A stretch of DNA of 64,000 nucleotides from Bigelowiella natans CCMP2755 (GCA_000320545.1 ADNK01002290.1:124001-188000); one strand, 5' to 3'; shown: positions 814 through 63,117, numbered from the stretch's first letter. Translations and numbers: made by a program. The notes: generated by a model not told the origin, from the sequence alone.

Positions 814-3021
814 ATGGCCAACAAATCACAGCAGCAGGAGCGACGGCAGCAGAAAAATCGATGGCGCATTCTCGGTTTCGACCCTGTAGCAGCATCGCTC
901 ATCAGCATCTTCACTCTGATAAATTTAAGTAGAGTCAGTATTCTCCTAGATGCAACTGTACTAAGTGCAGGCTGGGTGGCATTCATTTTAATCATGGCAG
1001 GGATTCATAGCATCATTGCATTAGGTAGGTGCTGCTGCTGCTGCTACTCATTCGTTCGTCGATTTTCAATACTTCCCTTGTTGATAACTTCGTCCTTACT
1101 TGCCTGCTTTATTATATACGTAAACCTATAGTTGTGTTAGTTGCCTTTAAGTGGATCACACATTCTGGTGGTTCTTCAGATCCAGAATTCTTTGTAAGAA
1201 TATGAATGAACCTCCACCTGTCTAGTTGGAACTTAAGTAAATTTATATCCCATTGCATACTTGAAATTATTATGCTAAGTTGCGATCGTTTGGTTGTAGA
1301 GATTAAATTTTTGTGAGAAGAGCAGCACGTTACTAATACTGCCACGCGCGATTGTTGCTTGGACAAATCAGTTCTTCGCAGTTTGTCGTCTGTCTCTACC
1401 AGTGTGCGTCCTACTTAATAATATAATCACGCTGCTACTGTTCCTTATTCAACTCAAATTGTTTTTGTTGTTCAATTGCCAACATCACCACCACCAATAA
1501 CCTTGTTGTGGCTGCCATTGTTGCATCCGCTCCACTCCCCTTGCTTCTTTCTCTCCTTCCTGTTATCACCTGCCGTAGGACGTATTCATCTGGATGCTCA
1601 CTAAAGTATTTATAGTTCTTCCTTTTCTCGCTCTGGTGAGTAGTAAGAAAGAGTGATGATGGACAACAAAACGATGATCAACAATGGATGTTAATTGTCA
1701 TGATCATTCTCTCTTCCTCCTTTATTCCTTAATATTGCAAAAGGGTGCAGAATTGGTTATCAGCTACGTGGCTGGTGGCTTCTCGCCTTTCTGGAGCGCA
1801 TGGAACTTCTTCCAAAGCAATATTCCTAACAATTGGATTATATTGATAAAGGTGGTTCTCTCTCTCTCTCTCTCTCTCTCTCTCTCTCTCTCTTGTTCAC
1901 TCTATCCACATAGTTTAGTGAGAAGCTGAGAAGAAGATGTGCTGCTACTGACATTAGGTTCTTGGAACTCTTTTCATTCTTCTCATCTCAAGATCAGGTG
2001 CCCAAAATTATAAAAGTGTTACATGTATCTAATATATATATATATATATATATATATATATATATATTACATATGCGATGGTGCACACGTGTAATTGCAT
2101 GCGTTTATTATTTCAATAATAATAGAATGTTCATACTCAAATACGCAGCAGCAATAATTATCTGTTTAAAATTCATGTTGGTATTTGTTCAAATGAATGG
2201 ACAGTTTTCTATGTTATGCGAACACACCATATGCACTGCAAAAAGTACTAGATGTACGAATATACACCTATCTACTGAAATAGTAAAAAAGTAACTTCAT
2301 TTGCGTAACTACTATCTCAGAAAAGCACGATCCTCTCAAAGCGGGAATAAAGTTAACAATAGCGACCATAATGCAGAAATTTAAATCTATTTTCATATCA
2401 TGGGCCAAGCTGGGAGAAAACTCTCCAAAATGCGCCAAATTTCCGGAGAATCGCCAGATCATTGTTGGAGACACTAAAAGAGTACTCGAGAATTTTCTTT
2501 CGAGCAACAGTCCTCAAGCAATTCTTTCAATAAGCGCGACAAACCTACGAAGACCCCGACGTATGAGTTTGTTTGCGTTAAAACCTAGTCCGTATTTAAA
2601 AATTTACGTGTCGTCATGCTCTAATACTATCTCGACCATTGCATCACAAGCGTGGAAACTAGTGACGACGACAGAAGTAATAAAATCATCTTCCAATCCA
2701 AAATGGTGCCTTCTTCATGTAAATCTGAACGATCTATGTCGTGGTAATCGATCAAATCCACTACTTTTTAAGTGTTTCCATACAAATAATTGCAAGACTC
2801 AGAGCAAAACTAATAACGATTTTTTGTTGGGTGAGTTTCGAACATCCATTGATGAACTGGAGAGTTTGCAGCCCGAAGCGGTGTTTAAACTTGTGAAATT
2901 GAAAGACTACAACCTCAATGCGAAGAGAAAGGATCGTGGTGCTGTGAAAATTGTCCTGGAAATTTACAAGGAAGAGGATGACGCTAACTCACCACCATTT
3001 GAAAACAAAAACGTAACTTAG
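814..3021 (+). CDS. Multi-exon membrane protein with C-terminal copine-type C2 domain (5' end uncertain, may start upstream)
   Basis: Last exon (~2321-3021) reads ILSISATNL...PSPYLKIY...WKLVTTTEVIKSSSNPKW...LNDLCRGNRSNPLLFKCF...LLGEFRTSIDEL, typical of the copine C2B domain. Upstream GT-AG-bounded + strand exons encode hydrophobic segments (814-1024 SAGWVAFILIMAG; ~1579-1635 DVFIWMLTKVFIVLPFLAL; ~1744-1851; ~1914-1997; ~2205-2244) and join in frame to the last exon. Confidence 0.65.
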
Positions 3022-3563
3022 CTTAATTCACTATGAATACACGTGCGTCAAGTTGCTTTTATTGGGCGCATTAAGATTATATTAGCGGAACTGATTAATG
3101 GACTTCGTTGCATGAGTTTGTCTATGTAAGACGGATGTAATTAATCAATTAAATTTGTTCAATAGTTATCCTCATGTAGCTATGCAAAGCAGCTGCCAAT
3201 GTGTCTCCAGAGATGTACGTATGTGCCTCTATTTTTAAAGTACAGTCAGCTTATTAATATTCAGCAGTAACCATGGTCAATGCATGTAGAATAAGGAGGG
3301 CAGAACGACTGTGCGTTGCGCGTGCTGCCGCGCAGTTACCAGATATAGCCGCCGCGGCGCATGAAGCAGCAATACGATATATAAGATAGCAAACTATTAA
3401 TTTGCCTGCATTTCGTAGCTTGGTCACGTAGCAAACTGTTGACCAATCACAACGCTGAACAACATGCACATGCCAGTGCGGCAATACTTAATATATTAAG
3501 TCGTCTAACGTAATGCAGGCTATATTGCTGCTTGAAATCGTCTTGTTTCCTACTTGATGTATG
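3022..3563. terminator. Convergent (tail-to-tail) interval with palindrome-rich tract
   Basis: Lies between two converging stop codons; enriched in TGCA/CATG/AGCT/GCGC. Terminator role is inferred from position only. Confidence 0.35.
3128..3192 (+). repeat. Dispersed ~65-bp repeat, copy 1 (convergent interval)
   Basis: AAGACGGATG...AAATTTGTTCAAT.GT.ATCCTCATGTAGCT.TGCAA matches 24433-24497. Confidence 0.8.
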
Positions 3564-61562: not shown

Positions 61563-62112
61563 GATTAGTTCTTGTCGTCCTCCCAATGAATACAACTTTT
61601 CGGGTTTCAGATCGAGGCAAGCAAGCAAGAGGGGTAGTCTACACAGAAATTAACTGAAAACAAGGAAGCGACAACTAAAATTGCTTCATTCTTACTGCAT
61701 TGGTCTGCCATAAAGCCATGTGCTCTTGCTGCCGTACTTCCATACCATACTTTAGAGGACACAAAAGTAAGGCCAAAATTAGGAGAATAAGCTCTTATGT
61801 ACGTTAAAACATACAAAATTGGCACTATTCTGTTGGTTGACATGCACAATTGCAACATTTATCGGGTAGAAATGAAGCGATTTCCCACCTGGAAACAGAG
61901 GATTTCCTGGATTTCCCGAAAGCGGCACCCGAGAATAATTTAACTGTATGGACAATCGGAGAAACATCGTGGAATTCTGTACTATAATTTTCAAAGAAAT
62001 AGATGATACTTCATTACAGCGACAATCAATTCTGTTTGTCATAATGGCATAATGCAGTAGAATGGCGGGTGATTTATCCGATAGGGGCTCTGGCACACAT
62101 TGAGCACATAAG

Positions 62113-63117
62113 ATGGGGAAAAAGAGGAGTGCACGAAGTCTCGCCCGTCCTCTAAATAGCTATGCGTCTAAACGGAAGTCCCTCGTCGCTTCGACTGAAA
62201 CTAATGTCTGCGAATCTTCACCGTCTCGTAATCCAGCAGCACAAAAGTGCACCATTCAACGGGAAAAGAGGAGTGAAGGCCACATAATCTCGAGGGAACC
62301 TCCTCCATCGAAGAAAAGACAACGACACAGCTCCTCCCGTGCAAAGGGAAAGATAAGCCACCTTAGGTGGATTGCGGCAATTATCCTCTCCTCTTTGTAT
62401 TGTCAGCAGTATTTCTTCAAGTTCGAGCCAGGTGGTACAACAATATTTGAATACCACCACCGATGAATCAAAAGGAAATGACGGTAAATACTTGTGTGAT
62501 AGCATCCACGAACCTTGCAAGTAACCCTGGCTTCCCAGGTTTGAAGTAGTAGGTTGACAGATGCAAAGCTCGAGCATTATTCTCACAAGAAATCATTTGA
62601 TCAAATATGAAGGCCCTTTTGGACTCTCGGGAGGTTTTTTGAGCAGATTTGGGCAATTGCCTCCCAACAATGCAGGAATGAATGACATGGGAGGGGGAGG
62701 GGGGTATGGTGGTCCTATGGAATTGTGGAGAAACGCTGGGGTGATTCAAAACACACACAAAAAATGCTAGGTAGCATCCACAGAAAAAGGAAATAAACAC
62801 ATTTGTTCGAATACGTCTCTGCGATGATAATTTAAAGAAAAGATGAGTTTACATCTTCTTTCGTACTTTCTCAGACAAATAATAATATGCTCTCTCGTCT
62901 TGGAGGAGGCGATGAATACTCGAGCAGCAGCCGCAGCAATCCAAGTTATGGCGGCTACATTGGAAACAATCCAAACTACGGCGGTTACAGCTCAAACATC
63001 CCTTCTCCACCACAGCCGCCATTTAACCAGGATCTTCGATATTATGGAGGTCCCGTTCCAGGAGTTGGAGGTGGAAGCGGTGGGATGATGTTGCCCCCAA
63101 ACAGAGGCGGTAAGTAA
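62113..63117 (+). CDS. Hypothetical protein, basic N-terminus and Gly/Tyr/Pro-rich segments (structure and 3' end unresolved)
   Basis: ATG-initiated K/R/S-rich ORF followed by + strand ORFs with GGGGYGG and NPSYGGY...NPNYGGY low-complexity content, ending at a GTAAGT donor near 63110. No family recognised. Confidence 0.35.

What the first reader, a model, noticed from the sequence alone, without database searches (positions are those of the whole stretch)
814..63117. Strictly alternating gene orientation across the whole window (17 genes, 16 consecutive strand switches)
Seen: once exons are assembled the genes read +,-,+,-,... without exception (C2+, RING-, eIF4E+, TPT-, PPR+, catalase-like-, TPR+, GTPase-, LC8+, GT8-, DRAM+, PUS7-, kinase+, PTP-, phosphatase-like+, GH78-, hypothetical+). 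With independent orientation, 16 switches in a row has probability 2^-16. Inference: the genome is built from head-to-head pairs sharing a ~0.5-1 kb bidirectional promoter, with pairs separated by a shared bidirectional termination region. This is the opposite of the co-oriented arrays of kinetoplastids and dinoflagellates. The paired genes are functionally unrelated, so the constraint looks architectural or mechanistic.
Basis: partly seen in the sequence, partly recalled or inferred. Interest (0 to 1): 0.9.

Follow-up and report, generated by a model that had tools for sequence, protein, structure and literature searches.

The report
Alternating gene orientation, strong not strict

Summary
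The strand pattern is confirmed; "without exception" is not.

Strand blocks alternate by definition, so the real test is whether each block is one gene.
- 814-3021 is one gene (transcript-derived protein P0078).
- 3564-9400 is not. RNA contigs show minus-strand introns throughout, but two separate ORFs (A, 401 aa; B, about 168 aa) lie 380 nt apart, a co-oriented pair.
- 48102-55290 stays unresolved.

That gives at least 18 genes, with 16 of at least 17 neighbour pairs switching strand (p about 1e-4, not 2^-16). On the 194 kb of flanking contig, a self-trained gene finder gives 28 of 38 switches. The whole contig gives 45 of 56 (80%), or 44-48 strand blocks against 30 +/- 4 expected for random orientation.

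Divergent spacers (median about 0.5 kb) are AT-rich and 4-fold enriched in TRCGACA. Spacers that hold 3' ends are about 6-fold enriched in CTAG.

The same kind of bias is published for Ectocarpus (about 62%) and Nannochloropsis; here it looks stronger. The scan has already reported this pattern on many other windows of this genome.

The parts
370..711 (-).
   Evidence: ORF 370-711; gene-finder model. Unverified.
814..3021 (+). C2-domain gene; one gene with at least 6 exons
   Evidence: Pfam C2. The MMETSP complete ORF P0078 (392 aa, 98% identity) maps colinearly to 814-1023, 1128-1193, 1579-1857, 1958-2008 and 2263-3018.
3022..3566 (.). Convergent (3'-3') spacer, 545 nt, with no CTAG cluster
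3540..5614 (-). Gene B: about 168-aa ORF in 7 exons. ATG at 5469, stop about 3567. The transcript contig reaches at least about 5614.
   Evidence: RNA joints 3631-3803, 3887-4063, 4575-4701, 4753-5050 and 5085-5404, all CT..AC. ORF continuity. Strand score -30 nats.
5470..5849 (.). Head-to-tail spacer between the stop of A and the ATG of B (380 nt). It holds a roughly 40-50-nt unit repeated three times and a (CA)n microsatellite. It has no TRCGACA and only one CTAG.
5850..9823 (-). Gene A: 401-aa ORF (ATG 9136, stop about 5850) in 11 coding exons, with a long 5' leader. The RNA contig runs on to about 9823.
   Evidence: RNA joints from 5925-6085 to 9377-9436, all CT..AC; the listed joints appear in all three Logan RNA assemblies except 9376->9437, seen in X1 only, and 7703->7810 was inferred from a loose end. 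ORF. No RING motif found.
10232..11433 (+). eIF4E gene
   Evidence: IF4E profile positions 26-45 at 10300-10515 and 56-79 at 10632-10946; strand score +29
11434..12006 (.). Convergent spacer with a CTAG cluster (14 CTAG, including (CTAG)3)
12007..13830 (-). Triose-phosphate-transporter family gene
   Evidence: Pfam TPT; strand score -37
13831..14290 (.). Divergent spacer, 460 nt, with 2 TRCGACA
14291..18495 (+). PPR gene. It is one gene: the two large ORFs are joined by an intron of about 290 nt.
   Evidence: Pfam PPR. The Lotharella globosa orthologue P0043 is colinear over 15177-15839, 16151-17638, 17833-18120 and 18213-18287.
18496..19076 (.). Convergent spacer with a CTAG cluster (16)
19077..20180 (-).
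21701..23782 (+). TPR-repeat gene (5' end uncertain)
   Evidence: Pfam TPR; strand score +75
23783..25430 (.). Convergent spacer with a CTAG cluster and a purine/pyrimidine-alternating tract
25431..26528 (-). Small-GTPase-like gene (weak Arf match)
27320..28000 (+). Dynein light chain LC8 gene (small exons; extent approximate)
   Evidence: Dynein_light profile positions 49-82 at 27860-27961, 34.7 bits; model at 27320-27694
29267..31031 (-). Two exons and one intron of about 180 nt.
   Evidence: MMETSP complete ORF P0001, 99% identity
31032..32108 (.). Divergent spacer with a (TCC)n microsatellite and 1 TRCGACA. My gene finder's exons here are false.
32109..34123 (+).
   Evidence: Strand score +24; no Frag1/DRAM hit
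35011..42504 (-). PUS7-like pseudouridine synthase; probably one gene
   Evidence: TruD positions 267-326 at 36539-36838. Only PDB hit of 41641-41862 is yeast Pus7 residues 62-97, E about 1. No internal CTAG cluster. Strand score -154.
43081..45739 (+). Protein kinase-Kelch gene; one gene
   Evidence: Kinase profile split 1-137 | 139-252 across exons 1 and 2; Kelch repeats in exons 2 and 3
45740..46519 (.). Convergent spacer with a CTAG cluster (15)
46520..47445 (-). Dual-specificity phosphatase gene
   Evidence: DSPc; strand score -31
48102..55290 (+). Long plus-strand model with a signal/transit-like N-terminus. Whether it is one gene or several is unresolved.
   Evidence: no homologues; plus-strand throughout and no internal CTAG cluster
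55291..56097 (.). Convergent spacer with a CTAG cluster (15-20)
56098..61700 (-). GH78 alpha-L-rhamnosidase gene (5' part 60.2-61.7 kb unverified)
   Evidence: Colinear Bac_rhamnosid_N, Bac_rhamnosid and 6-hairpin domains from 60188 down to 57348
62113..63117 (+). Hypothetical plus-strand gene; plus-strand coding continues past the window's end

Best explanation
This is a real feature of genome architecture. In this nuclear genome (Bigelowiella natans according to earlier scan notes), neighbouring protein-coding genes lie on opposite strands far more often than chance. The rate is 16 of at least 17 neighbour pairs in the window and about 75-90% on the 258-kb contig. Most genes therefore form head-to-head pairs.

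Shown:
- The strand of every block.
- Single-gene status for five blocks.
- One hidden co-oriented pair.
- Short AT-rich divergent spacers enriched in TRCGACA.
- CTAG/CATG/TGCA-rich sequence in every class of spacer that holds a 3' end.

Inferred:
- Each divergent spacer carries the promoters of both genes.
- Head-to-tail neighbours are selected against in this compact genome, because read-through from an upstream gene would run into the next promoter.
- The 3' spacers are where insertions are tolerated and then scarred by the host's TpA-targeted hypermutation.

It is a strong statistical tendency of the same kind as in Ectocarpus and Nannochloropsis. It is not an absolute rule.
For: - Block strands.
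- One gene per block shown for C2, PPR, kinase-Kelch, the P0001 gene and the GH78 core.
- Window: 16 of 17 switches, p 1.4e-4. Flanks: 28 of 38, p 0.0025. Whole contig: 45 of 56, p 2.7e-6.
- A test that needs no gene count: 44-48 strand blocks on 258 kb. At the published density of 21,708 CDS per roughly 94.5 Mb, about 59 genes are expected there. Random orientation would give 30 +/- 3.8 blocks; P(>=44) is 1.5e-4.
- A run of 15 consecutive switches among 56 neighbour pairs is unlikely unless the switch probability is at least about 0.8.
- TRCGACA: 20 hits in divergent spacers against 5.0 expected (p 1e-7). In the flanks alone: 10 against 2.5.
- CTAG density is 12 per kb in convergent and tandem spacers, 2.6 in divergent spacers and 1.8 in genes. 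Of 19 CTAG clusters, 15 lie in +/- convergent spacers.
- (CTAG)3 occurs 5,555 times genome-wide, against 123 for the reversed control.
- An annotated locus of the relative Amorphochlora amoebiformis reads -,+,- with spacers of 480 and 762 nt, although its genes are 10-20 kb long.
Against: - Strand blocks alternate by definition. One of the two long models I could test turned out to be two co-oriented ORFs, so other merges may exist. 48102-55290 is unresolved and PUS7 is only weakly supported.
- My flank annotation comes from a self-trained gene finder. It invents small exons and cannot place boundaries between tandem genes.
- Only one contig (0.3% of the genome) was examined directly.
- There are no TSS, 3'-end or promoter-activity data.
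- In this small sample, tandem spacers are not clearly longer than divergent ones.
Confidence: 0.72

Rival explanations
1. This is largely an annotation artefact. Co-oriented genes with very short spacers are common here and get merged into single 'genes'. The true switch rate would then be close to that of other algae (50-60%), and the perfect run is an illusion.
For: - The block 3564-9400 is two ORFs only 380 nt apart.
- My gene finder merged them at every penalty setting.
- The 7-kb blocks 48102-55290 and 35011-42504 lack firm single-gene evidence.
Against: - The window has 17 blocks in 62 kb (3.7 kb per block). That is denser than the published mean of 4.35 kb per gene, so blocks cannot hold many genes on average.
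- Five blocks are shown to be single genes.
- The CTAG-rich tracts that follow 3' ends elsewhere, including in tandem spacers (12 per kb), are absent inside the window's long blocks.
- Contig-wide block count is 44-48, against 30 +/- 4 expected.
Confidence: 0.12
2. This is a regional feature of this contig, or of gene-dense euchromatic stretches, and not a genome-wide property.
For: I read only contig C1447. The flanks are less regular (74%) than the window (94%), and they hold co-oriented runs next to transposon relics.
Against: - (CTAG)3 arrays, the signature of the 3' spacers, occur 5,555 times across the genome.
- More than 30 earlier, unchecked scan notes report the same pattern on other pieces.
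- One locus of a related alga is consistent with the pattern.
Confidence: 0.08
3. The alternation is real, but it is a passive by-product of where insertions and rearrangements are tolerated. There would be no selection for shared bidirectional promoters or against read-through: mutation bias plus purifying selection on promoters.
For: The 3' spacers look like mutational scars: CTAG/CATG/TGCA-rich and purine/pyrimidine-alternating. This fits the TpA-targeted hypermutation of foreign DNA shown for this species. Transposon relics sit in the co-oriented parts of the flanks.
Against: - Insertion tolerance alone does not create alternation; it needs an added cost for head-to-tail neighbours.
- TRCGACA enrichment and the narrow size range of divergent spacers point to functional constraint.
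Confidence: 0.25

Closest known systems
[quoted passage not shown] 2010 as cited in 10.1101/2024.02.19.579948 and 10.1101/2020.03.09.980763)
   Same: An excess of alternating neighbours, many divergent pairs, and short divergent intergenic regions (median 409 bp in Ectocarpus; about 0.5 kb ATG-to-ATG here).
   Different: - Degree: about 60-62% there, against about 75-90% on this contig and 94% in the window.
- Lineage: stramenopile there, rhizarian (chlorarachniophyte) here.
- In Ectocarpus tandem spacers are much longer (2,293 bp). Here they are not clearly longer, and one is only 380 nt.
- The papers read do not describe a CTAG-rich 3' spacer signature for brown algae.
Nannochloropsis gaditana and other photosynthetic stramenopiles (PMC3566019)
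   Same: [quoted passage not shown] Intergenic regions are under 1 kb. A bidirectional promoter has been proposed and one was shown experimentally.
   Different: There, the longest alternating run in the whole genome is 15 genes. Here, a run of 16 genes (15 switches) occurs within a sample of 57 genes.
Bidirectional promoters of mammals, yeast and plants (about 10% of human genes in head-to-head pairs under 1 kb; PMC2077898, PMC4089025 as listed)
   Same: Head-to-head pairs with under 1 kb between starts.
   Different: There it concerns a minority of genes and overall orientation is near random. Here it is the default arrangement.
Polycistronic or dicistronic loci (kinetoplastid arrays; green-algal polycistronic mRNAs, from my own knowledge and not checked here)
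   Same: The A/B pair consists of two ORFs on one strand 380 nt apart. In one RNA run the spacer is transcribed throughout.
   Different: One pair only. No read or contig was shown to span both ORFs. The rest of the window is the opposite of co-oriented arrays.

Membership tests
Alternating-orientation genome architecture with divergent pairs (Ectocarpus / Nannochloropsis type) | The fraction of adjacent genes on opposite strands is significantly above 0.5 | tested here: met
   Window 16 of 17. Flanks 28 of 38 (p 0.0025). Contig 45 of 56 (p 2.7e-6). 44-48 strand blocks against 30 +/- 4 expected.
Alternating-orientation genome architecture with divergent pairs (Ectocarpus / Nannochloropsis type) | Divergent intergenic regions are short (under about 1 kb) and shorter than tandem ones | tested here: inconclusive
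   Divergent ATG-to-ATG spacers are 33-1,520 nt (median about 0.5 kb). The 11 tandem spacers are 299-1,944 nt (median about 0.64 kb). The sample is small and the boundaries come from a gene finder.
Alternating-orientation genome architecture with divergent pairs (Ectocarpus / Nannochloropsis type) | The property holds genome-wide | not testable with these tools
Only indirect support exists: the genome-wide (CTAG)3 count and unchecked scan notes.
Shared bidirectional promoter | Paired TSSs within one nucleosome-free region, with one element driving both genes | not testable with these tools
   Only one transcript end is known: gene A reaches about 9823, 409 nt from the eIF4E ATG. TRCGACA enrichment in divergent spacers is suggestive.
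Dicistronic / polycistronic transcription unit (for genes A and B) | Both ORFs are carried on one mature mRNA | tested here: inconclusive
   RNA contigs break at the tandem repeat and the (CA)n tract in the spacer. The spacer is covered in run X1 but hardly in X3 and X4. No spanning record is listed.
Co-oriented polycistronic arrays (kinetoplastid / dinoflagellate type) | Long runs of genes on one strand | tested here: not met
   The longest same-strand run in the window is 2 genes. On the contig it is at most 4-5 genes.

The most novel reading that the evidence does not exclude
The Bigelowiella natans nuclear genome (and perhaps chlorarachniophytes generally) is built almost entirely from two-gene head-to-head modules, with a genome-wide switch rate of 80% or more. 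That would be the most regular gene-orientation pattern described for any eukaryote. A dedicated TSS-proximal element (TRCGACA) would sit in the divergent spacers. The CTAG-rich palindromic 3' spacers would act as terminators or insulators, and not merely as scars.
Probability: 0.35. Interest if true: 0.7.

Novelty: new member of a known kind. Interest (0 to 1): 0.5.

Why it matters
If the genome-wide rate is really about 80-90%, this alga would be the clearest natural test case for an open question. Does neighbouring-gene orientation matter because of promoter sharing, read-through interference or supercoiling? Or is it a neutral by-product of where insertions survive?

It also has practical value:
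- Gene finders for this genome could use strand alternation and CTAG-rich 3' spacers as priors.
- Divergent spacers are candidate compact two-way promoters for transformation of chlorarachniophytes.

The A/B result is a warning. Counts of 'perfect alternation' made from strand blocks overstate the regularity.

Tried and rejected
- Looking up the window's own ORF in public assemblies: nothing on record.
- A self-trained gene finder. It is good for strand calls, but it invents tiny exons (for example 31133-32007 in a spacer). It could not split A from B at any gene penalty, and its gene count depends strongly on that penalty. I therefore did not use it to decide on tandem boundaries. Splice signals are weak, little beyond GTA...AG.
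- Pfam, PDB and representative-library searches of exons from 3.5-9.5 kb, 35-42 kb and 47.5-55.3 kb: almost nothing. The match of 40461-41189 to the proteasome S5a UIM region suggested a second gene inside the PUS7 block. I dropped this because the neighbouring upstream exon weakly matches the Pus7 N-terminus and the S5a match looks like low complexity.
- An in-frame A-B fusion through an unseen splice is arithmetically possible (acceptors at 5556 or 5580). No RNA joint supports it, and the X1 contig reads straight through those sites.
- Purine/pyrimidine-alternating tracts as 3'-end markers: they also occur in introns.
- Using (CTAG)3 hits as genome-wide anchors: the loci returned were short repeat-rich contigs and were uninformative.
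- Metagenome search for relatives: nothing. The first Amorphochlora look-up failed until the longer isoform was used.
- The Curtis et al. 2012 genome paper is not held in the library.
- No paper on gene orientation in Bigelowiella was found.
- Spliced (joined) gene models were not sent to any search tool. Exons were searched one by one by reference. Only ORF-continuity arithmetic was done locally.
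Full report
WHAT THE WINDOW IS

The window is G000:C1447:124001-188000 of a 91.4-Mb assembly in 3,736 contigs. It is intron-rich eukaryotic nuclear DNA with about 42% G+C. Two ORFs match MMETSP transcript proteins at 98-99% identity. Earlier scan notes name the organism as Bigelowiella natans. 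I fetched the rest of the contig (1-124000 and 188001-258000). All direct evidence therefore comes from one 258-kb contig.

THE KEY CAVEAT

If one assembles exons into strand blocks, the blocks alternate by definition. The observation only means something if each block is one gene, or if blocks are as dense as genes. I tested both points.

STRAND OF EACH BLOCK

- C2+.
- TPT-.
- PPR+.
- TPR+.
- The 509-aa minus-strand gene is P0001.
- DSP phosphatase, minus strand.
- TruD/PUS7, minus strand, weak support.
- Kinase+ and GH78-.
- LC8+ exon at 27860-27961.
- eIF4E+.

I wrote a self-trained two-strand gene finder. Run on each block with one strand switched off, it favours the stated strand by 22-221 nats. 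This held for every block except LC8, and for all ten blocks whose strand is known independently. A sliding 1.2-kb version finds no opposite-strand coding signal inside any block. The identities 'RING', 'catalase-like', 'GT8' and 'DRAM' were not reproduced. This does not affect the strand calls.

ONE GENE PER BLOCK?

(i) 814-3021 is one gene. The complete transcript-derived ORF P0078 (392 aa) maps colinearly over all its exons.

(ii) 3564-9400 is not one gene.
- Three independent RNA assemblies show 15 joints, plus one more recovered from a loose end. All are CT..AC, that is minus-strand GT..AG introns, running from 3631 to 9436.
- The raw RNA run has reads on one orientation only. The whole 6 kb is therefore a minus-strand transcribed region.
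- The spliced sequence nevertheless holds two separate ORFs. A is 401 aa (ATG 9136, stop about 5850). B is about 168 aa (ATG 5469, stop about 3567).
- The 380-nt gap between them holds a roughly 40-50-nt unit repeated three times and a (CA)n tract. That explains why all contigs break there.
- An A-B fusion through an unseen splice is arithmetically possible but unsupported.
- I read this as two co-oriented genes, or one dicistronic unit, at about 75% confidence.

(iii) 48102-55290 is unresolved.
- It starts with a signal/transit-like peptide.
- It is plus-strand throughout.
- It has no homologues in any library searched.

Further blocks shown to be single genes:
- PPR: the Lotharella orthologue is colinear across both large ORFs.
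- Kinase-Kelch: the kinase domain is split across two exons.
- The GH78 core.
- The P0001 gene.

COUNTS

The window holds at least 18 genes, and 16 of at least 17 neighbour pairs switch strand (p 1.4e-4).

With the curated window plus gene-finder calls in the flanks:
- The contig has 57 genes and 45 of 56 switches (80%, p 2.7e-6).
- The flanks hold genuine co-oriented runs: SHMT+, an unknown plus-strand gene and an SPX+ gene. They also hold a Ty3-like retroelement ORF.

A test that needs no gene count:
- The sliding strand test finds 44-48 blocks on 258 kb.
- The published 21,708 CDS in about 94.5 Mb predict about 59 genes there.
- Random orientation would give 30 +/- 3.8 blocks; P(>=44) is 1.5e-4.
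- These figures imply a switch rate of roughly 0.75-0.8.
- A run of 15 consecutive switches among 56 neighbour pairs is unlikely unless the rate is at least about 0.8.

SPACER ANATOMY

Divergent spacers (ATG to ATG):
- 33-1,520 nt long, median about 0.5 kb.
- AT-rich.
In the flanks alone it is 10 against 2.5.
- The motif is also enriched in tandem spacers (11 against 4.0) and not in convergent ones (5 against 7.3).
- Gene A's transcript contig ends at about 9823, between two TRCGACA copies (9795 and 9852) in A's orientation.

Spacers that contain 3' ends:
- Convergent and tandem spacers alike carry 12 CTAG per kb. Divergent spacers carry 2.6 and genes 1.8.
- AGCTAG, GCTAGC, CATGCA and TGCACA are the top enriched words, with p down to 1e-53.
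- Of 19 CTAG clusters on the contig, 15 lie between a plus-strand gene and a minus-strand gene.
- If clusters form at any 3' spacer, the 15:4 ratio implies a switch rate of 0.79-0.88.
- (CTAG)3 occurs 5,555 times genome-wide, against 123 for the reversed control.
- No such cluster lies inside the window's long blocks. This argues weakly against further typical tandem boundaries there. The A/B spacer lacks one too, so atypical ones can escape this test.

A RELATIVE

One annotated locus of Amorphochlora amoebiformis reads -,+,-. Its spacers are 480 and 762 nt, although its genes are 10-20 kb long. This is consistent with the pattern but is only three genes.

LITERATURE

The same kind of bias is published elsewhere.
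- Ectocarpus: 61.7% of genes flanking TSS-adjacent intergenic regions belong to a divergent pair; the median divergent spacer is 409 bp.
- Brown algae generally: above 60%.
- Nannochloropsis gaditana: the longest alternating run genome-wide is 15 genes; a bidirectional promoter is proposed and one has been shown.

I found no paper describing gene orientation in Bigelowiella. The 2012 genome paper is not held in the library, so I cannot exclude that it mentions the pattern.

The TpA-to-TpG/CpA hypermutation of foreign DNA in this species offers an explanation for the scar-like 3' spacers.

VERDICT

It is highly non-random as a gene pattern, but it is not 'without exception'.
- The interpretation (head-to-head modules with short promoter spacers and distinctive 3' spacers) is partly supported. 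Promoter sharing and shared termination remain inferences.
- This is a new and seemingly stronger instance, in a new lineage, of an architecture already known from stramenopile algae.
- The scan has reported the same pattern on many other windows of this genome.

PROCEDURE NOTES

- Spliced models were searched exon by exon, by reference.

Noticed in passing
window 3540-9823 (-): Genes A (401 aa) and B (about 168 aa) lie head-to-tail with only 380 nt between A's stop and B's ATG. The spacer has no TRCGACA and no CTAG cluster, and it is fully covered by RNA contigs in one run (X1). This is a possible dicistronic unit, or a promoter of a different kind.
   Followed up: partly
window 9137-9823 (-): Gene A has a leader of about 630 nt with one 60-nt intron (9377-9436). 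The leader holds an upstream ORF of about 113 codons (9572->9234). A second frame has high coding score (9149-9367) but is not connected to the main ORF by any observed splice.
   Followed up: no
window 5600-5830: A unit of roughly 40-50 nt (TAAGAAGAACAACAAGTACGAAATAGAAACAACGATATGG...) is repeated three times, next to a (CA)n microsatellite. All three RNA assemblies break here.
   Followed up: partly
divergent spacers of contig C1447 (e.g. window 9795-9858, 13889-14210, 26859-27004): TRCGACA copies tend to be 'crossed'. Copies oriented towards the minus-strand gene lie in the half of the spacer nearer the plus-strand gene, and vice versa (16 of 20, p 0.006). If the motif marks TSSs, divergent 5' leaders would overlap head-to-head.
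   Followed up: partly
window 11520-11896, 18578-19093, 24133-24659, 45722-46278, 55564-56021: The 3' spacers are built from CTAG, CATG and TGCA palindromes, including (CTAG)3 runs. (CTAG)3 occurs 5,555 times in the genome against 123 for the reversed control. Tandem spacers carry the same signature, so it goes with 3' ends and not with convergence as such.
   Followed up: partly
window 43081-45739 (+): A protein kinase domain is fused to C-terminal Kelch repeats in a single three-exon gene.
   Followed up: no
window 56098-60188 (-): A bacterial-type GH78 alpha-L-rhamnosidase with the full N / concanavalin-like / six-hairpin domain order sits in an intron-containing nuclear gene. Possibly an old horizontal acquisition.
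   Followed up: no
window 31780-31835: A long (TCC)n microsatellite in the divergent spacer creates a spurious poly-Glu / poly-Ser ORF that fooled my gene finder.
   Followed up: yes
L021:820-5790 (-) (contig 248817-253790): An intact-looking 1,657-codon ORF with reverse transcriptase and RNase H domains (Ty3-like retroelement). It lies in a run of minus-strand genes.
   Followed up: partly
L008-L010 (contig 63251-85484, +): A 22-kb plus-strand block with about 17.9 kb of predicted coding sequence: a giant gene. Not examined.
   Followed up: no
L035 (Amorphochlora amoebiformis BAAHQB010000183.1:214866-255283): In this relative a 711-aa PPR gene spans 20 kb, yet the spacers to its oppositely oriented neighbours are only 480 and 762 nt. 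Genes have expanded (introns) while intergenic spacers stayed short.
   Followed up: no
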